Shown: positions 2,575 through 25,418 of the stretch, in pieces
Layout: every line of letters begins with the position of its first letter
Numbering within the stretch: position 1 is the first letter of the stretch
Source of the DNA: Octopus bimaculoides
Lineage: Eukaryota
Assembly: GCF_001194135.2 (NCBI RefSeq)
Contig: NC_068986.1
Coordinates: 21,855,296 to 21,889,970 of the forward strand
Direction of reading: 5' to 3'
DNA: 34,675 nucleotides
The notes under the pieces: model-generated
The model's input: the letters and a program-made list of their open reading frames with translations, nothing else
Told to the model about the DNA's origin: nothing
The model's database searches: none
Position numbers and translations under genes: made by a program

Positions 2575-3120
2575 NNNNNNNNNNNNNNNNNNNNNNNNNN
2601 NNNNNNNNNNNNNNNNNNNNNNNNNNNNNNNNNNNNNNNNNNNNNNNNNNNNNNNNNNNNNNNNNNNNNNNNNNNNNNNNNNNNNNNNNNNNNNNNNNNN
2701 NNNNNNNNNNNNNNNNNNNNNNNNNNNNNNNNNNNNNNNNNNNNNNNNNNNNNNNNNNNNNNNNNNNNNNNNNNNNNNNNNNNNNNNNNNNNNNNNNNNN
2801 NNNNNNNNNNNNNNNNNNNNNNNNNNNNNNNNNNNNNNNNNNNNNNNNNNNNNNNNNNNNNNNNNNNNNNNNNNNNNNNNNNNNNNNNNNNNNNNNNNNN
2901 NNNNNNNNNNNNNNNNNNNNNNNNNNNNNNNNNNNNNNNNNNNNNNNNNNNNNNNNNNNNNNNNNNNNNNNNNNNNNNNNNNNNNNNNNNNNNNNNNNNN
3001 NNNNNNNNNNNNNNNNNNNNNNNNNNNNNNNNNNNNNNNNNNNNNNNNNNNNNNNNNNNNNNNNNNNNNNNNNNNNNNNNNNNNNNNNNNNNNNNNNNNN
3101 NNNNNNNNNNNNNNNNNNNN
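2575..3120. other. Assembly gap (N run); further gaps at 3853-3968 and 25293-25418
   Basis: N runs, each abutting (TA)n and/or (CA)n microsatellites. Confidence 0.99.
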
Positions 3121-3153
<33 letters not shown>

Positions 3154-3635: not shown

Positions 3636-3968
3636 TATTCTTTTATTTGTTTCAGTCATTTGACTGGCCATCCTGGAGCACCGCCTTTAGTCGAGCAAAT
3701 CGACCTCAGGACTTATTCTTTCTAAGCCTAGTACTTATTCTATCAGTCTATTTTACCGAACTGCTAAGTTGCAGGGACATAAACACACCAGCATTGGTTA
3801 TCAAGCGATAGTGGGGGCCAACCACAGCCACACGAACACACACACACACACANNNNNNNNNNNNNNNNNNNNNNNNNNNNNNNNNNNNNNNNNNNNNNNN
3901 NNNNNNNNNNNNNNNNNNNNNNNNNNNNNNNNNNNNNNNNNNNNNNNNNNNNNNNNNNNNNNNNNNNN

Positions 3969-4011
<43 letters not shown>

Positions 4012-4166: not shown

Positions 4167-4762
4167 TTATTTTAGACTCAATTCCTGCCCTTGTTTCTGG
4201 AATCTATCCTGATGAAATACTGAGTTGAACAGATTTGATCTTCTTTGCATTTCTTACTGTCATCTGTGTTCATCTGATGTGTCAGATGAACGTTTGTCTA
4301 ATCGTTCTTTGAACACATCCACCTCTTACACCTCACAGATGTCTGAAGCCTATTGGCAAGGTACTGAAAATTCGTGGGCTTTTGAACTCTAAGCCATAAC
4401 AATATTGGGTCCTTACTTTGGATGGGTCTTTGGTCTTGAGATCTTTGGTACTTTGCACAGATGCCCAACTCAGTGATGGATATAGCTTTCAGTCCCAATT
4501 TTAATTAATTTTGAAAATAAGGAATTTATCAAAATAACTTTTGGCATTATTAATCTGGTGTTTGGAAGGATTTCATTCAGATTATCTTAAAACAGGAAGT
4601 TTGTATCATAGAACTAAGGAGTGTTTCAGGCAGGGTGTGATAAAAAAAATTGGAAAGGTAAAAAAAATTCAAATATCAATTTCAAAATAAACGAATTGAA
4701 ATACCTTTTTTCCAATTATATATTATTTAAATGTATAACTTTTAAAGACATTTAAATATATG

Positions 4763-5775
4763 GAATGAAGAGCAAGGGCCGTTCTTCAGTTATTTATTTA
4801 AAGCTGTATATGGCTATGATGCAGCCACACTTGGAACCCTATCTTGCTCCTCGGGACACTGACCTCCTGGAAACTGTTCGGAGATGTGCAACCAAGCAAA
4901 TACCCTCCATCAGGCATCTACCATACTCTGAATACCTTGCTTCCCTGGGCAGAGATACATCAAAACACCCACAAAATTATTAACCATCGCGCCAACAACC
5001 ACCTTGAGCACCTTTTTGAGCTCCATGTGTCTAACACATGTGGGCATACCTACAAAGTCAGAAAACAGCACAGCTCCCATGACTTTTGGAAATGTTTTTT
5101 CACACTCAGAGTTGCTGAAGCATGGAACAAACTACCTGCATCAATTGTTAGTTGCTGAGACACTGCATCTTTTAAAACCTCCATGCTTCCTGAAATTTAC
5201 CAACACTACACCTGATACCCCACCCTCCATACATTGTTGTTGGCACTCCGTCGTTTACGACGTCGAGGGTTCCAGTTGATCCGATCAACGGAACAGCCTG
5301 CTCGTGAAATTAACGTGCAAGTGGCTGAGCACTCCACAGACACGTGTACCCTTAACGTAGTTCTCGGGGATATTCAGCGTGACACAGTGTGACAAGGCTG
5401 ACCCTTTGAATTACAGGCACAACAGAAACAGGAAATAAGATTAAGAGAAAGTTGTGGTGAAAGAGTACAGCAGGGTTCGCCACCATCCCCTGCTGGAGCC
5501 TCGTGGAGCTTTTAGGTGTTTTCGCTCAATAAACACTCACAATGCCCGGTCTGGGAATCGAAACCGCAATCCTATGACCGCGAGTCCGCTGCCCTAACCA
5601 CTGGACTATTGCGCCTCCACTACCCTCCATACATATGCACACATGTATATCATGACTCCTACACTATTCACTTTCCTGACTTTTGTACATAATTCTATGT
5701 ACCGTACATGTACCTTCGATGAGCTGTAGGACACCTGAGCCCTATACACAATAATTTCATTATTGTTATTTTTTT
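4763..5775 (+). mobile_element. 5'-truncated CR1/L2-type LINE 3' end, interrupted by a SINE at 5235-5621
   Basis: Frameshifted translation LYxAMMQPHLE, DLLETVRRCATKQIPSIRHLPYSE, SNTCGHTYKVRKQ, FFTLRVAEAWNKLP is typical of the CR1/L2 ORF2 C-terminus; TTA-rich tail near 5760-5775. Confidence 0.8.
5235..5621 (-). mobile_element. Full-length tRNA-derived SINE with a 13-bp target-site duplication
   Basis: Head GGAGGCGCAATAGTCCAGTGGTTAGG...GGTTTCGATTCCC (A/B boxes), (ACA)n tail, TSD ACCCTCCATACAT at 5222-5234 and 5622-5634. An older related copy is at about 6715-6975. Confidence 0.88.
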
Positions 5776-7250: not shown

Positions 7251-8362
7251 CTGATACATAAAACAAAATTTTGAATTAGCAAACATTATTTCAACTATTC
7301 CAGTTATTATAAGAATTTATGGGTATAACAGGAAACAGACGGTAATCAACCAATATTTAAAGAGAGTCTTTAATATGGACAAAAATATTTTTGAAGATCA
7401 TGTTATTATGGCTGGGTGGTTAAGAAGTCCAGCCCCCAACCACATGGTTTTGGGTTTAGTTCCACTGCAAGGCACTTTGACAAATGTCTTCTAATTATAG
7501 CACCAGGTTGACCAAAGCCTTGTGAGTGGACTTAGTAAGTGGAAACTGAAAGAAGCTCATCATTTATACATGGACACATATGTATATATGCCTATATATC
7601 TATATATTATTTATATTATTATATGACTGAACGCCACGCATCCATTTCCAAGTAAGTTTAATCTTAATAATTTCGATGCAACACTTATCCTATCTCTTTC
7701 TCTTTCCCTCTCCTCTGTCATTTCCTCTCTCTTCCTTTCTCTAATTCTTTTTATCTCCCCTTCTCCCCCTTTCATTTTTTTCTCTCTCATCCTTTCTCTA
7801 ATTCTTTTTCTCTCCTCTTCGTCATTCACTGTCTGTCCCTCTCTCTCCCTCACTCTTCCGCCTTTGCTCTCTTATTGCTTGCATGAGACCATCAGCCATC
7901 TTTCTTTTCTTAACTTGAATTGCTTTCTTTCTTTCCTTCTTTCTTTCTGATCAGCCGCAAGGATAAGACGCATTCTTGTCTGTCTCCTGCCAAAGCTTGT
8001 TCCTCTGCGTTCAGCAACTCAACTTGTTCAGGCTTAGTGGCCCTTCCTGTTTGTTTTCAGACATGTCTTAGACAGGTTAGTATGAAAAGGGTTAAAAGTT
8101 TAACTAACTGCTGGTTGCAGAATGTTATAACTAATTTAGTACATGGTGCAGAAGAAAAGAAGGGGGAGGCAGCAGATGCTAATTTGGGGGTAGAATACCT
8201 GGATTCCTTGTTAATAAACACCAATAAAGCAAATCAATGAAATACTTAGAGAGCAAAAATTAATGTCCATCAGAAACTTAAAGCATATTACGATCAAGCT
8301 AACCAGAAGCTAGAAATAAACATCAATGACAAATATTACATAAAAGGGAAATCCCAACTTAC

Positions 8363-12366: not shown

Positions 12367-13330
12367 ATATATATATATAAAGTTGTGAATTTCAGGCAGT
12401 GAAAGACCCTATAACAGTTTGTATTGTTTTTTTTTTTTATATTGGTTTTGTCTGCAGAAAGGGTCTGTACCTTACAGCCTTTGCAGGTCCTATGAGATAG
12501 GTGAGATTGATGCCAGTAACATTCCACTTGAATTATTACAACAAATCAACAGTTAGTTATAAGAAAAATATTTGGAAGGAGGAAGGACTAACATATTAAT
12601 CAATGCAGAACATGGGTGGAGAAAACCGAATAGGAAATGAAAGGAGGAAAGATGAGTAAGTCAGAATACCTAAATGAATACGACATGAGATTGGCCAGTT
12701 CTATAAAGCAGAGGTTATTGTATTCAGACCACAAAGGTTTGTCTGTATGGGCCTCAAGCTTATAGTAAATTTTTTCAAATTTAAAGGACCATTGAACAAT
12801 TGATGGCTTTTAGACAATCTTTGGTGTTGTGATTTGTTTAATTTTTGCTTATATAAGCAGTTGAGGGGTTCAGGTAATTAGAGTAAGAACAAAGTGAAAA
12901 ATTTTCAGAGAGTTATTACCTTTGTTGACAAGATGAGATTAGGGGGATTAGAGAATTCATGGCTAAAATATTCCTCTCAGAAGCAACAAAATGATGTAGA
13001 AACTAAACCTCAGGCTTTCACTTCCAACAGGAAAGGAGTTTTAAAGATCAAGGTTATCACAGATACATTGCCAGAACTGCCTGACTGGCCCTTGTGACGG
13101 TGGCTCGTAAAAAGCACCCACTACCCTCTCGGAGTGGTTGGCGTTAGGAAGGGCATCCAGCTGTAGAAACTTTGCCAGTTCAGATTGAGCCTGGTGCAGC
13201 CTCTGGCTCACCAGTCCTCAGTCAAACCATCCAACCCATGCCAGCATGGAAAGTGGACGTTAAACGACAATGATGATGATGACATTGTAAAACCCTGAAG
13301 GAAGCAAGTATTAAAAATACATATATCTTA

Positions 13331-14046: not shown

Positions 14047-15717
14047 CTTTTAAAGTATAAAAAAATAAGCACAGAGTGAAACAGTTTAGATTAAAATAGC
14101 TTATTTTAAATACAGTAAATAGCTACAGTGACAACTTTATTAGTGAAGGTAAAGTTATTTAGTGACCCTGCCCGTGCTGGTGCTACATAAAAACATCCAG
14201 TCCCACTATAAAGTGGTTGGCATTTGGAAAGGCATCCAGCTGTAAAAATTATACCAAAACTAACCTCGCTGGCGCTAATGCCATGTAAAAAGCACTGAGT
14301 CCACTCTGCAGAGGGGTTGATATTAGAAAGGGCATCCAGCCATAAAAACCCTACCAAAACAGACACAGTAGCATAGGGTAGTTTTCTACCTGACCAGCTC
14401 CTATGAACCATCCTACCGATGCATGCATGGAAGATGGACGTTAAACAATGATGATGATGATGATGATGATGATGATCCACAGTTCCCAACATTTTCTTTG
14501 CACCATGGACTGGTTCCATACAAGACAATTCTTACACAGACCAGGGGATCATGTGCATAACAAAACACAGTGAAGTGTGTAATACATAATTTAATTATTA
14601 CATATATAATACGTATATAATGCAAAAACACCCTGCAGATTGTGACAACCATTAAAATAGAAATAAAATTTCAAAATTTATTCTTTCTGTGTGGCCCACT
14701 ACCAAAGGATTTACGACTTGGCACTGGTCTGTAATCCCATGTGTAGGGGACCTTTGATCTAGATGACAAAAGGAATTAATAATACACAGATGGACTAAGA
14801 ACTAATTATATATCTAAAAGAAAAAGACAGCAGCATAACATGGAGTGTGCAGATTACACAGGGTGAACGCTTTATGTGTGTGTTTGTTGTAGTCAAAGGT
14901 TTGTTGCGCTTAAAGAAGTGGGCAGGCAATTTGATAAGGACCCAATGTGCTATCCAGGAAATGAACCTTTGACAAACTTCATAACCATTAGTCAATATAC
15001 CATCACAGTATCAATAGTACAATTTGTAGTCTTAAAATATACATAAGCAATGAAGCAATTTTTTATGCACTGTCTTCTCCCCTACAGCTTCTCTACCCCC
15101 TCAGTACCTCTTATCTTTCCTCCTCTGAATAACCCCCACCACCATCAACCCTCTACACTTCTCTTTCCTTCACTGACTTTCTTAGGATTCCTCTGCACCC
15201 TAGGCTACTCCATTTCTGTTCCCTTTATGCTACACCTTCTGTCCATACTTATTCATATTAGACAGCCTAGACAACCCAGTCCTTTACACAACCCACCCAA
15301 CAAAATCTTTCAACTTTATCCCTCCCATTTCCTCAATAACTTTGTTCCTAATCCCTTCCTGCTTCCCTGTTCCCTGTCATACTCCTCAGCCTCCCCACTT
15401 ACTTACCATTCCTCATCCTCCTGCCTAGAATCATTCCCCACTCTCTTTTCTCCCTCAGTCACTTTAGGCCCTTAGCCTTGCAAGTTACAAAGCAATCATC
15501 ACTGCTGCTGATGCCATGAAAAAAAAAAAGAACACCCAGTACCCATTGTAAAGGGGCTGGCATTAGGAAGGACATCCAGTCACAGAAATAGGGTCATACT
15601 TGTCAGATCCCGTCAAACCATCCAACTCGCGCCAGTATGAAAGCTGGACATAAAATATTGATTATGATGATGATGATGCTGATGTGAATTATAAATATAC
15701 AAGAAACGGTAACTTAC

Positions 15718-15868
15718 CATGCAACCAAAAACACAACGTAAAAATGAAAGAACTTTTGGTGATAATGGTGCAGAACCTGTCGTAATCAACTTTGTACGTC
15801 CTCCTAAAGTCTTTTGAATTTCACGAAAAATTAATTTATCCCACCAACTGTTATTGCGAAGAATACCT
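15718..15868 (-). CDS. ACSL1: ACSL exon, 151 nt: (R)GILRNNSWWDKLIFREIQKTLGGRTKLITTGSAPLSPKVLSFLRCVFGCM
   Basis: Acceptor tttatttcag, donor gtaagt, phase 2/0; motifs WDKLIF, LGGR and TGSAPL. Confidence 0.96.
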
Positions 15869-16566
15869 CTGAAATAAAAGATATATAAGAGCATAAGTAT
15901 TTCAAACGATTCTGGTCTTCATTACCATATATTTTCATTACCCAGTTGTAGACATAGATGTGCCATGTCCTTGCATGTCATAAGATGCAACTGAAAAGGT
16001 TTGCAACAAGTAGAAGCTCTGGCTGTAAAACACTGCCTCATGGCATGGACTGGATCATCATCATCATCAACTACCAAATCCACTCTATTACAGCCCAGGG
16101 TTAGAGTAGAGGACCCTTTCCCAAGGTGCTGCACAGTGGGACTAAATCCAAAATCACATGGTTGAGAAGCAAGCCTTCAGACCACATAATCATGCCTGCC
16201 CAATTACAAGAAACATGCATGTAAAAAGCACCATTCAAGCCTGGGTCATTGCCAGTGCTGCCTGACTGGCCCTCATGCCGGTGGCATGTAAAAAGCACCC
16301 ACTACACTCTCAGAGTGGTTGGTATTAGGAAGGGCATCCAGGTGTAGAAACCTTGCCAGATCAGATTGGAGCCTGGTACAGCCATCTGGTTTGCCAGTCC
16401 TCAGTCAAACTGTCCAACCCATGCCAGCATGGAAAGCAGACATTAAACGATGATGATGATGATGATGATGAGATGATACAAATACACAAAGATGAACAAA
16501 CAAACAGAAAGCCTTCTACAGAGAGAGAGAACCAAGACGGAATGTTTCTTTTACTAGCAGTAATTA

Positions 16567-16906: not shown

Positions 16907-17459
16907 TATATGTTTGAAAGCTATATTTCACTCACAAGTATTATAACTTGTTATTCTTGCAGATCAGTGGGTGGGTAAGTGGGCCTTGCATTCAATACAG
17001 AAAACATGTGTCAAGAGAATACTTGACCTTTAGAGTTGCTGAGCATGACACAAATATGGCTACAGCTAAAGACACCTTGCTAAAAACAAAAATCAAAATA
17101 AAACATCTTCTTCATTGATAAGCAAATGTTTTCATTGGTGTCAGTTCTAAATTTCAAAACAGTTACAAAGAAAGGTGTAAACGTTGGTTGATAGTGATCA
17201 TCGAGACTTTAGTCTCTCTCTATCACCTTTCAACAGCATTATAAATGAAGAGACATAGGAACAATTAACAACATAATAAAAAGGTTTTATTTATGATGAT
17301 GCTTGGTTTCACAATTCCTGTCATTCAGCTTAGCCACCGCTGATTAAGTTATAGTTGGTAATGGAAGGTTAAGGTCTTCCTTGATGCCTGCCAGAGAACG
17401 GTGTAAAAGTGCTTCGTGGAGGAGCGAAGTGTTGTCACGTAGAAGGTCTCAGGCTCAAC

Positions 17460-17600
17460 TCACCGAGATAATGAAAGTAACTGCTTAAGTACGAGTTTTA
17501 CTACGCATGCGCAACTCGAGGGGCTTCCGGTGGTGAAGTCCCCTGCGCATGCGCAGAATAGTACTTCCTCAATGGCGGCTATAATTTCGCGCCACTACAA
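17460..17600. promoter_or_regulatory. CpG-rich, promoter-like motif cluster inside an ACSL intron
   Basis: ACGCATGCGCA 17503-17513 and palindrome CTGCGCATGCGCAG 17543-17556 (NRF1 type); CTTCCGG 17524-17530 and ACTTCC 17563-17568 (ETS); CAATGGCGGC 17570-17579 (YY1); TTTCGCGC 17585-17592 (E2F); ACTACAA 17594-17600 (ZNF143 half-site). CpG-dense against a CpG-poor background. Confidence 0.6.
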
Positions 17601-17652
17601 AGGGAAAATAAACTTATTACATAAATCATAAGTTAAAAAAAAAACAGCTTAC

Positions 17653-17735
17653 CTTTCCAATTCACTTGCTTTGGCAGATAATGCCATATTGAACACACAT
17701 TGCTTTACTTTGCTTGAGTTTACTTTTTCTAAAAT
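17653..17735 (-). CDS. ACSL1: ACSL exon, 83 nt: ILEKVNSSKVKQCVFNMALSAKASELE(R)
   Basis: Acceptor ttttttgacag, donor gtaagc, phase 0/2; supplies the phase needed by the next exon. Confidence 0.88.
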
Positions 17736-19375
17736 CTGTCAAAAAATATTTTTTAAATGTAAAATTTATTTAATAATGTTATTTCATTCACAGAAAATTT
17801 CAAATGAATTTAATCTGATTTACCTTGTATTTAATTGATATCAACATAGTTGCAGTAAATAAATGTTGGCGATTAAAAGAAACAGCAAGCATTTGAATTT
17901 TAACTGAGGGCAAAATATCTCAGCTGACTATATCGAAACAGTTTAAATTGAAACTTTTTATTGTTCTAATATGGAATTTGGAATGAGAGACAATTGGGAG
18001 CAGTTGTTTGGACACTGATGATTTCGCATGGCTGACTGGACATTCAACCCACTTTGGCAGCAGTACTTTTTGGCACAGGAAGCAGATATATACATGCACA
18101 CACACAAGCAAATGCACATATAGAAACATACACACACATGCACATATATATAGAGAGAGAGAATGAATACAATTTATTAATTGAACCCAATTGACATAAA
18201 TACTCTCCCTCTCTTCATACACATAAAGAAATATGCTTACACACTTAAATAGAGGAGGAATGGAGAATGAGAGTAACATTGAAGCACTTAACGTGAAACA
18301 AGTTAGCATTAAAAAAACCTGACCGGCCACCATCAGTTTGTGCCAGTCACCACTGAAACCTCGAGTGTTCTTGGACCTCACGCTTTCAATTTTCCCTGCA
18401 AAATTGGAGTAATTGCAGTGCAACTAAGAAATGAGCCCTGCAGAGTGGGGTGCAGTGAGTGTTGCTGTCCATTCTCCATGGTAACATCACTATGGTTATG
18501 TCAGCTAGATGCGGCTGAAAACACCATTTGTTCTGAGGTGTACTCCCTCCCTGCAACATCTTCAGCTTCTTAGCCTCCGCCCCTTTCCTTTTTTCTTTGT
18601 AATCAAATTGTGATTTAATCTTTATGTAAATAAAACTTATAAACTAAACAGATATATTATAAGAAAAACCAGTGCATAAATGCTATGTACAAATCTAACA
18701 GAGAGAGTGGATTATTAAAGCACTAATTAAGTACGGTGGGTGGGGTCAACTCTTCATACTCCCTCTCAGCTACAAGAGGACCATGAGAGACCACTTGCTT
18801 CTAAAATAATGGAAAAGGAGAGTTGCGTGAGGAGTTAGCAACAGCTTGTTTAGCATGATACAAAAACTGTCCAGAGAAACCAGAGGAAGTGGGCATAGAG
18901 GGACCAATGTGCCATGCAGTATAACAGTTAAAAAAAAAAAACACTAACCATTCAACCATCCAGTAAAAATGACATTCCATGCCAGAGGCACACATGACTG
19001 CATGGTGAAGAAATGAGTTTCACAACTGCAGTTTCAAGTTCAGTCCTGTTGTACGGTACTTAGAACCATCTATTATAGTCCCCATACCAACCAAAGCCTC
19101 GTAAAGGGATTTGTTAGGTAGAAGCTGAACGATTCCAACACTCTCTCTCTCTCTCTCTCTCATTGTGTGTGTGGGTGCTTATGTCTTCTTGTCTTGACAT
19201 CATGCCAATCCACACACAAAACTTTGGTTGGCTCAAGGCTACAATAGAAGACATTTGCCAAGGTGCTGTGCAGTGGAACTGAACCTGAGACCACATGGTT
19301 AGTAAACAAACCTCTCAACCACACAGCCACATCTGTGCCTGTAAAAGAATTTTTAAAAATCTGTAAAATTCTTAC

Positions 19376-25292: not shown

Positions 25293-25418
25293 NNNNNNNN
25301 NNNNNNNNNNNNNNNNNNNNNNNNNNNNNNNNNNNNNNNNNNNNNNNNNNNNNNNNNNNNNNNNNNNNNNNNNNNNNNNNNNNNNNNNNNNNNNNNNNNN
25401 NNNNNNNNNNNNNNNNNN

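What the first reader, a model, noticed from the sequence alone, without database searches (positions are those of the whole stretch)
17286..17600. Housekeeping-type promoter buried mid-gene, with a possible spliced first exon
Within about 100 bp there are two NRF1 sites (one a perfect 14-bp palindrome), two ETS cores, YY1, a canonical E2F site and a ZNF143 half-site, plus a GC hairpin at 17520-17543. This is the only such CpG-dense motif cluster I found in the window, and it lies 50-150 nt past the donor of ACSL exon 17653-17735. This motif combination is established for constitutive, often bidirectional metazoan promoters. Downstream on the minus strand are a strong donor TCG|GTGAGT (17463), a pyrimidine tract with CAG at 17388 (76-nt intron) and AATAAA at 17291-17286. 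Three readings are possible (inference): a short spliced ncRNA; an internal first exon splicing to the 15868 acceptor, whose first in-frame ATG (15720) would give an about 248-aa C-terminal ACSL fragment lacking the P-loop and gate; or an antisense transcript (ATGGCGGCT on plus at 17572).
Basis: partly seen in the sequence, partly recalled or inferred. Interest (0 to 1): 0.7.

Follow-up and report, generated by a model that had tools for sequence, protein, structure and literature searches.

The report
Promoter-like solo LTR in octopus intron
The promoter-like motif cluster inside this octopus fatty-acid-activating gene is real, but it sits on a 424-bp piece of DNA inserted only in Octopus bimaculoides, with the end signatures of a lone retrotransposon LTR, so it is most likely transposon cargo, not an old hidden gene promoter.

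Summary
Window 17500-17599 carries two NRF1 sites (one a perfect 14-bp palindrome), ETS, YY1 and E2F motifs. Each occurs nowhere else in the 34.7-kb window. The block lies 53-152 nt past the donor of ACSL5-like coding exon 12 and is the most CpG-dense in the window.

The window is Octopus bimaculoides (100% identical to GCA_001194135.2). In the same intron of O. vulgaris and O. sinensis, the whole feature (17176-17599, 424 bp) is cleanly absent. That segment holds the motifs, the "first exon", the "76-nt intron" and the AATAAA.

The extra segment begins TGTA and ends TACA, and is flanked by a 4-bp duplication (AAGG). Removing it restores the empty site without gaps. On the gene's strand it reads promoter-like block, then AATAAA, then about 110 nt more. 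That is a solo-LTR signature (U3-R-U5).

The CpG richness needs no promoter activity. Every other CpG-dense block in the locus is a repeat copy, and the window's second block is also a bimaculoides-specific insertion.

The donor and AATAAA occur at chance frequency. I found no other copy and could obtain no transcript evidence. Genome-wide copy number and promoter activity remain untested.

The parts
17176..17599 (-). O. bimaculoides-specific 424-bp insertion, read as a solo LTR in the same orientation as the host gene. On the minus strand it reads 5'-TGTAGTGGCGCG...CAACGTTTACA-3'.
   Evidence: Absent at exactly this point in O. vulgaris (L001) and O. sinensis (L004). GC 0.43, 18 CpG, o/e 0.92, against o/e 0.24 in 980 bp of flanks. 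TGTA...TACA termini. Single copy in four loci totalling 276 kb.
17172..17175 (.). Left copy of the 4-bp target-site duplication AAGG.
   Evidence: The empty site in O. vulgaris and O. sinensis holds a single AAGG.
17600..17603 (.). Right copy of the 4-bp target-site duplication AAGG.
   Evidence: Removing 17176-17603 gives a gapless 60/64 match to the empty site.
17500..17599 (-). U3-like promoter motif block (E2F, YY1, ETS, NRF1, ETS, NRF1, read 5' to 3' on the minus strand).
   Evidence: NRF1, CCGGAAGY, YY1 and E2F each have their only window match here.
17543..17556 (.). Perfect 14-bp palindrome CTGCGCATGCGCAG (NRF1 consensus).
   Evidence: (I13).
17503..17512 (.). Second NRF1-like site ACGCATGCGC (one mismatch).
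17501..17556 (.). 56-nt imperfect palindrome: the two NRF1 sites pair around the GC hairpin 17520-17543, which contains the ETS site CCGGAAGC.
   Evidence: dG -20.6 kcal/mol, z -5.4; I6.
17571..17579 (-). YY1 motif GCCGCCATT. Its complement holds the plus-strand ATG at 17572; only 28 nt remain before the insert ends.
17585..17592 (+). E2F motif TTTCGCGC.
17458..17463 (-). Donor-like GTGAGT inside the insert.
   Evidence: GTRAGT occurs 41 times in the window, so one is expected by chance about once per 1.7 kb per strand.
17286..17291 (-). AATAAA followed by T/GT-rich sequence, about 110 nt before the insert's 3' end. This position fits an R/U5 boundary.
   Evidence: AATAAA occurs 106 times in the window, so it is not significant alone.
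17653..17735 (-). ACSL5-like coding exon 12 (aa 352-379). Its donor lies 53 nt upstream of the insert.
15718..15868 (-). ACSL5-like coding exon 13 (aa 379/380-429), whose last codon is M429 (15720-15718).

Best explanation
The feature is a 424-bp insertion specific to the Octopus bimaculoides lineage (window 17176-17599) in the intron between coding exons 12 and 13 of the ACSL5-like gene. It is most likely a solo LTR of a low-copy LTR retrotransposon, lying in the same orientation as the gene.

Shown:
- It is present in O. bimaculoides and cleanly absent in O. vulgaris and O. sinensis.
- It has TGTA...TACA termini and a 4-bp AAGG target-site duplication.
- It is compositionally distinct from its flanks.

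Inferred:
- An integrase inserted a full element after the split from the O. vulgaris/sinensis lineage. Recombination between the two LTRs then left one LTR.
- The NRF1/ETS/YY1/E2F block is the element's own U3 promoter, the AATAAA marks the end of R, and the last ~90-110 nt are U5.
- The CpGs survive because the DNA is young and/or because octopus transposons are not methylated, whereas the surrounding gene body is CpG-depleted.

Whether the LTR now fires as an internal promoter of ACSL5-like is not shown. I think it is more likely silent or only weakly active.
For: 1. Species and orthologs. The window is 100% identical to O. bimaculoides CM046606.1. Orthologous loci were fetched for O. vulgaris, O. 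sinensis and Argonauta.
2. Clean presence/absence. Window 17800-17599 and 17173-16224 align to adjacent bases in O. vulgaris and O. sinensis. After removing the insert and one AAGG, the reconstructed empty site matches both species gaplessly at 60/64.
3. Termini and duplication. From window k-mer frequencies, chance of TG..CA is 0.0055, of TGT..ACA 6e-4, and of TGTA..TACA 4e-5. A 4-bp flanking repeat by chance is 0.005.
4. Composition changes exactly at the boundaries: o/e 0.92 inside, 0.24 outside.
5. Calibration. All other CpG-dense blocks in the 62-kb O. bimaculoides locus are copies of multi-copy repeats. Window 5233-5621 is another bimaculoides-specific insertion with o/e 0.91, and an O. 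vulgaris-specific repeat insertion has o/e 1.05.
6. Literature. In O. bimaculoides, methylation sits on gene bodies and is absent from transposons and promoters (PMC9476566). LTR elements are under 1% of the genome, with 275 full-length Gypsy copies found (PMC6238403). A low-copy family is therefore plausible.
7. Internal order on the minus strand (promoter block, then AATAAA about 308 nt in, then about 110 nt) fits U3-R-U5.
Against: - No second copy and no full-length element with this LTR was found. There is one copy in 276 kb, nothing in a six-frame peptide search, and nothing in exact scans of metagenome or viral contigs. None of these searches covers the octopus genome, so family membership is unproven.
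- No close outgroup. The Argonauta intron is unalignable beyond about 40 nt from the donor. Polarity (insertion versus deletion) therefore rests on the duplication and termini.
- The terminal inverted repeat is only 4 bp.
- A motif set of NRF1, ETS, YY1 and E2F is more typical of host housekeeping promoters than of LTRs I know of (own knowledge).
- AATAAA and GTGAGT occur at chance frequency, so the U3-R-U5 reading is consistent with the data but not demonstrated.
Confidence: 0.65

Rival explanations
1. Captured copy of a host bidirectional promoter. A roughly 420-bp piece of a real divergent housekeeping promoter from elsewhere in the genome was pasted into this intron at the DNA level during break repair. 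The piece would carry one non-coding first exon with its GTGAGT donor on one side and the first 9 codons, MAAIISRHY, of a gene on the other.
For: The motif grammar is that of host housekeeping promoters: paired NRF1, ETS, YY1 overlapping an ATG, and E2F (motif knowledge is my own). The segment is single-copy in 276 kb. A strong donor lies about 40 nt after the motif block.
Against: This reading would need TGTA...TACA ends and an exact 4-bp flanking duplication by coincidence, at chances of 4e-5 to 5e-3 and 5e-3. Break-repair capture does not normally make target-site duplications (own knowledge). The donor is at chance frequency. The source locus could not be searched.
Confidence: 0.15
2. Working internal promoter, whatever its origin. 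The block fires in O. bimaculoides and yields one of three products. One is a short spliced ncRNA. Another is a chimeric mRNA from the 17463 donor to the 15868 acceptor, encoding the 248-aa C-terminal ACSL fragment from M429. The third is an antisense RNA.
For: The motif cluster is intact and statistically exceptional. CpG o/e is 1.13 over 200 bp. The donor at 17463 would join exon 13 in an open frame, and the first ATG is M429. Intronic LTRs that became promoters of N-terminally truncated isoforms are known, for example the MTC LTR that drives mouse Dicer-O (PMC8069103).
Against: The segment is not conserved in two congeners. The CpG richness is explained equally well by recent insertion, as it is for the repeat insertions in the same gene. 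Splice and poly(A) signals are at chance level. The only called protein-coding gene in the 62-kb locus is ACSL5-like, with no nested gene. A 248-aa fragment lacks the P-loop (TSGTTG, aa 254-259) and could not be an acyl-CoA synthetase. No junction peptide was found (weak test).
Confidence: 0.12
3. Ancestral intronic element that the O. vulgaris/O. sinensis lineage lost by a deletion between two short direct repeats.
For: No close outgroup is available to polarise the difference. Deletion between short repeats also leaves one repeat copy.
Against: The deletion would have to remove exactly a TGTA...TACA-bounded unit plus one copy of a 4-bp repeat. An old non-functional segment in this CpG-depleted gene body (o/e 0.24-0.28) should have lost its CpGs, yet it has o/e 0.92. 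The Argonauta intron (about 970 bp) has no NRF1 core and no similarity to the insert.
Confidence: 0.04
4. Assembly artefact: a foreign read or contig was wrongly joined into the O. bimaculoides scaffold.
For: The assembly has N gaps elsewhere in the window (788 N).
Against: There are no Ns near the insert. Both junctions are continuous sequence. A mis-join would not create a 4-bp duplication of the target.
Confidence: 0.03

Closest known systems
Solo LTRs of Ty3/Gypsy or BEL/Pao-type LTR retrotransposons
   Same: TG...CA (here TGTA...TACA) termini. A 4-bp target-site duplication. Length of a few hundred bp. Promoter-like region upstream of a poly(A) signal on one strand. Clean presence/absence between related species.
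   Different: No other family member and no internal gag-pol partner was found with the sequence available. The terminal inverted repeat is only 4 bp. The U3-like part carries a host-housekeeping motif set (NRF1 x2, ETS, YY1, E2F) and no obvious TATA-driven promoter.
Intronic LTRs co-opted as alternative promoters of N-terminally truncated isoforms (mouse MTC LTR driving Dicer-O, PMC8069103; LTR-driven oocyte genes, PMC5538554)
   Same: A lineage-specific LTR in sense orientation inside an intron. It has a promoter-like block followed by a donor-like site that could splice to the next exon. It predicts an N-terminally truncated protein.
   Different: There is no transcript evidence here. The predicted 248-aa product would lack the ATP-binding P-loop and is unlikely to be a working enzyme. 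The MTC LTR promoter is CpG-poor (PMC8069103), whereas this block is CpG-rich.
Metazoan CpG-rich housekeeping / bidirectional promoters (NRF1-ETS-YY1-E2F type)
   Same: Motif content, spacing within about 100 bp, local CpG o/e above 1, and motifs readable in both orientations.
   Different: It is not at a gene start and is not conserved in the orthologous intron of two congeners. It is bounded by transposon-type ends. The plus-strand ATG has only 28 nt before the insert ends.

Membership tests
Solo LTR (LTR retrotransposon / endogenous retrovirus-like) | Termini 5'-TG...CA-3' forming a short inverted repeat | tested here: met
   The insert begins TGTA and ends TACA. Chance is 0.0055 for TG..CA and 4e-5 for TGTA..TACA.
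Solo LTR (LTR retrotransposon / endogenous retrovirus-like) | 4-6 bp target-site duplication directly flanking the element | tested here: met
   AAGG at 17172-17175 and 17600-17603. The empty site in O. vulgaris and O. sinensis has one AAGG, and the reconstruction is gapless at 60/64.
Solo LTR (LTR retrotransposon / endogenous retrovirus-like) | Belongs to a family: other solo copies, and full-length elements with two such LTRs flanking PBS, gag-pol and PPT | not testable with these tools
   No octopus whole-genome search is available. One copy in 276 kb of four loci. Indirect searches were negative.
Solo LTR (LTR retrotransposon / endogenous retrovirus-like) | U3-R-U5 order: promoter, transcription start, poly(A) signal, short U5, all on one strand | tested here: inconclusive
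   The minus strand has the motif block at 17599-17500 and AATAAA at 17291-17286, followed by about 110 nt. AATAAA is frequent in this AT-rich DNA (106 per window), and no transcription start is known.
Resident CpG-island-type housekeeping / bidirectional promoter | Cluster of NRF1/ETS/YY1/E2F motifs with local CpG enrichment | tested here: met
   14 CpG per 200 bp, o/e 1.13, GC 0.50. Each specific motif is unique in the window.
Resident CpG-island-type housekeeping / bidirectional promoter | Conserved at the orthologous position in related species | tested here: not met
   Absent in O. vulgaris and O. sinensis. No NRF1 core anywhere in their 81-83-kb loci or in the Argonauta locus.
Resident CpG-island-type housekeeping / bidirectional promoter | Transcription start sites, open chromatin and unmethylated state | not testable with these tools
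   No expression, chromatin or methylation data can be queried. The only called gene in the locus is ACSL5-like.
High-copy octopus SINE / repeat families | Many copies per tens of kb | tested here: not met
   SINE-like units have 12-19 copies per locus, whereas the focal insert has 1.
Structured RNA gene (snoRNA, snRNA, tRNA) | Match to an Rfam model or a tRNA fold | tested here: not met
   No Rfam match at gathering score. The best permissive match is SNORA49 at 17.4 bits against a cut-off of 35, E = 0.56. No tRNA.

The most novel reading that the evidence does not exclude
A species-specific solo LTR delivered a complete housekeeping-type promoter (NRF1/ETS/YY1/E2F) in sense orientation 53 nt past an exon of ACSL5-like. 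In O. bimaculoides it is active, making either an LTR-initiated chimeric transcript (17463 donor to exon 13) or a new ncRNA. That would be a cephalopod counterpart of mouse Dicer-O, caught soon after insertion and with the empty allele preserved in sister species.
Probability: 0.1. Interest if true: 0.55.

Novelty: new member of a known kind. Interest (0 to 1): 0.3.

Why it matters
In this octopus gene body, CpG-dense, motif-rich islands mark inserted elements, not resident promoters. Motif-based promoter calls in cephalopod introns therefore need an ortholog check first.

If the LTR proves active, the locus would be a clean, dated example of a transposon handing a ready-made promoter to a metabolic gene in a cephalopod, with natural "empty-site" controls in O. 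vulgaris and O. sinensis. If it is silent, it is an ordinary neutral insertion.

Tried and rejected
- Rfam at gathering score over the whole window, and in permissive mode on 17100-17700: nothing credible. tRNA scan: none.
- Longer target-site duplication (ACAAAGAAAGG / ACAAAGGG, LINE-type): rejected. It needs an indel, whereas the 4-bp model gives a gapless empty site.
- DNA-transposon or MITE reading: rejected. The terminal inverted repeat does not extend beyond 4 bp.
- Helitron reading: rejected. There is a target-site duplication and the ends are not TC...CTRR.
- Duplicate of ACSL's own 5' region: rejected. There is no similarity anywhere in the 62-kb locus at word size 7.
- Polarising with Argonauta: failed, because the intron is unalignable.
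- Looking for other copies or a source locus: six-frame peptides of the insert against 5.8 billion proteins gave nothing at E<=10. Exact look-ups of two ORFs from the insert gave nothing. Exact DNA scans of metagenome and viral contigs gave nothing. None of these covers octopus genomes properly.
- Chimeric LTR-exon-13 peptide search: returned only three unrelated exon ORFs from other molluscs, from 5 candidates. Uninformative.
- Supplementary files of the mollusc LTR survey hold no sequences.
- Pfam on neighbouring repeat ORFs: no family.

Full report

Yes. Reading 17100-17900 and scanning for the motifs confirms every item:
- a perfect 14-bp palindrome CTGCGCATGCGCAG at 17543-17556, containing the NRF1 core;
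- a second NRF1-like site at 17503-17512 (one mismatch);
- ETS CCGGAAGC at 17523-17530 and GGAAGT at 17563-17568;
- YY1 GCCGCCATT at 17571-17579;
- E2F TTTCGCGC at 17585-17592;
- GTGAGT at 17463-17458 and AATAAA at 17291-17286 on the minus strand;
- ATG at 17572 on the plus strand.

The NRF1 pattern has 2 matches against 0.03 expected from shuffles. NRF1, CCGGAAGY, YY1 and E2F each have their only match in the 34.7-kb window here. The hairpin at 17520-17543 is the core of a 56-nt imperfect palindrome in which the two NRF1 sites pair (DNA fold -20.6 kcal/mol, z = -5.4).

The 200 bp from 17401 hold 14 CpG (o/e 1.13), the most in a window whose overall o/e is 0.28. A second dense block lies at 5226-5700, so "the only one" is not quite right.

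GTRAGT (41 per window) and AATAAA (106 per window) are common. The donor and poly(A) signal therefore carry no statistical weight.

**2. Gene context**

A rough exon concatenate found Octopus ACSL5-like proteins. tblastn and an exact exon map show 21 coding exons on the minus strand. Exon 12 is at 17735-17653 (aa 352-379) and exon 13 at 15868-15718 (aa 379/380-429). The last codon of exon 13, at 15720-15718, is M429. That fragment would lack the P-loop TSGTTG at aa 254-259.

**3. The key result: the feature is a lineage-specific insertion**

I fetched the genomic loci of the orthologous genes: O. vulgaris (L001), Argonauta hians (L002), O. bimaculoides (L003) and O. sinensis (L004). The window is 100% identical to O. 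bimaculoides CM046606.1.

In both O. vulgaris and O. sinensis, window 17800-17599 and window 17173-16224 align to directly adjacent bases.

Base-level inspection gives this anatomy:

...acaaagaaAGG|TGTAAACG ... CGCCACTACA|AAGGgaaaat...

The insert is 17176-17599 (424 bp). It starts TGTA and ends TACA, and is flanked by AAGG on both sides (17172-17175 and 17600-17603). Deleting the insert plus one AAGG restores a gapless 60/64 match to the single-AAGG empty site of both congeners.

Chance probabilities from window k-mer frequencies are:
- TG..CA: 0.0055;
- TGT..ACA: 6e-4;
- TGTA..TACA: 4e-5;
- a 4-bp flanking repeat: 0.005.

The ZNF143 "half-site" ACTACA is simply the last 6 bases of the insert, directly against the junction with the target-site duplication.

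**4. What the insert is**

TG...CA ends, a 4-bp target-site duplication and a few hundred bp of length are the hallmarks of an integrase-made LTR insertion reduced to a solo LTR (established knowledge of LTR retrotransposons).

On the minus strand, which is the gene's strand, the order is promoter-like block (first 100 nt), then AATAAA 308 nt in followed by T/GT-rich sequence, then about 110 nt to the end. This fits U3-R-U5. The opposite orientation would give an atypical layout: TATAAA at 17240 and AATAAA at 17275 on the plus strand, followed by about 320 nt.

The composition changes exactly at the boundaries. Inside, GC is 0.43 with 18 CpG (o/e 0.92). In 980 bp of flanks, o/e is 0.24.

**5. 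Why the CpG density is not evidence of promoter activity here**

Aligning the window to O. vulgaris lists the one-sided indels. The window's second CpG-dense block (5233-5621, o/e 0.91) is also a bimaculoides-specific insertion, this time of a multi-copy repeat. An O. vulgaris-specific repeat insertion has o/e 1.05. All other top CpG windows of the 62-kb O. bimaculoides locus are copies of repeats present 12-15 times per locus.

Published methylomes show that O. bimaculoides methylates the bodies of about 14,000 genes but not transposons or promoters (PMC9476566). CpG-rich islands inside this CpG-depleted gene body are therefore the expected look of inserted elements.

**6. What remains unproven**

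- Family membership. The insert is single-copy in the 276 kb I could read, unlike the SINE-like units (12-19 copies per locus). LTR elements make up under 1% of the O. bimaculoides genome, with 275 full-length Gypsy copies reported (PMC6238403). A low-copy family is plausible, but it was not shown.
- Indirect searches for other copies or a source locus all failed. None of them covers octopus genomes.
- Polarity. Argonauta cannot polarise the event because its intron is unalignable beyond about 40 nt. Polarity rests on the duplication and termini.
- Activity. The only called gene in the locus is ACSL5-like. A peptide search across the predicted LTR-exon-13 junction returned only unrelated exon ORFs; that test was weak.

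**7. Mechanism and probabilities**

- That this is a lineage-specific insertion: about 0.95.
- That it is a solo LTR: about 0.65.
- Captured host bidirectional promoter: about 0.15. It is disfavoured by the termini and the duplication.
- Ancestral element deleted in the other lineage: about 0.04.
- Assembly artefact: about 0.03.
- That the block is transcriptionally active today, whatever its origin: about 0.12.

If active, the frame from the insert through the 17463 donor into exon 13 is open but has no ATG before M429. The product would be a non-enzymatic fragment or a non-coding or decay-targeted RNA.

**8. Comparison with known systems**

The closest kind is a solo LTR. The closest functional analogy is an intronic LTR promoter creating an N-terminally truncated isoform. 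The example is the mouse MTC LTR between Dicer1 exons 6 and 7, which gives Dicer-O (PMC8069103; see also PMC5538554). The block works like, but is not a member of, the resident housekeeping-promoter class, because it fails the conservation test.

**9. Verdict**

This is an ordinary kind of event (a young transposon-type insertion) with an unusually host-like promoter motif set. Interest is modest unless expression data show that it fires.

Noticed in passing
window 5233-5621: The second CpG-dense block of the window (23 CpG, o/e 0.91, GC 0.51) is also an O. bimaculoides-specific insertion relative to O. vulgaris. It belongs to a repeat with 4-6 copies per locus.
   Followed up: partly
window 16217-16478 and 13071-13281: SINE-like units ending in a (GAT)n/(ATC)n run, which translate as poly-D or poly-H. 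They have 12-19 copies in each Octopus locus and 5 in Argonauta. The copy at 13071-13281 is absent in O. vulgaris.
   Followed up: partly
L003 2928-3159, 24230-24460, 25977-26205 (outside the window); L001 59328-59559: A roughly 230-bp CpG-rich repeat family (o/e about 1, 12-15 copies per locus) accounts for most CpG-dense windows of the ACSL5-like locus. One copy sits in the CpG-rich 1.2 kb just downstream of coding exon 1. The copy at L001 59328-59559 is an O. vulgaris/sinensis-specific insertion.
   Followed up: partly
L002 34684-34900 (Argonauta hians, same intron): About 40 nt after the exon-12 donor, the Argonauta intron switches to an unrelated GC-richer sequence. This is possibly its own repeat insertion, close to the position where O. 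bimaculoides has the LTR-like insert.
   Followed up: no
window about 2575-3135, 3853-3998, 25293-25418: Assembly gaps (788 N in total) flanked by (TA)n-type simple repeats. The window-to-L003 alignment breaks at the same places.
   Followed up: no
window 15001-15500 and 7501-8000: Strongly strand-skewed low-complexity stretches (GC skew -0.64 and -0.45), C/T-rich on the plus strand. The first lies just downstream of exon 13.
   Followed up: no
L001 40176-42053 (with a matching copy in L004): An 1,878-bp single-copy segment present in O. vulgaris and O. sinensis but absent in O. bimaculoides. It is one of about ten clean insertions in that lineage. Overall the O. vulgaris and O. sinensis genes are about 20 kb longer.
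   Followed up: no
window 4756-5155 (+): Open frames with a ...LPYSEYLASLG... motif that looks to me like the C-terminal tail of a non-LTR (LINE) reverse transcriptase (own knowledge). Pfam gave no match.
   Followed up: partly
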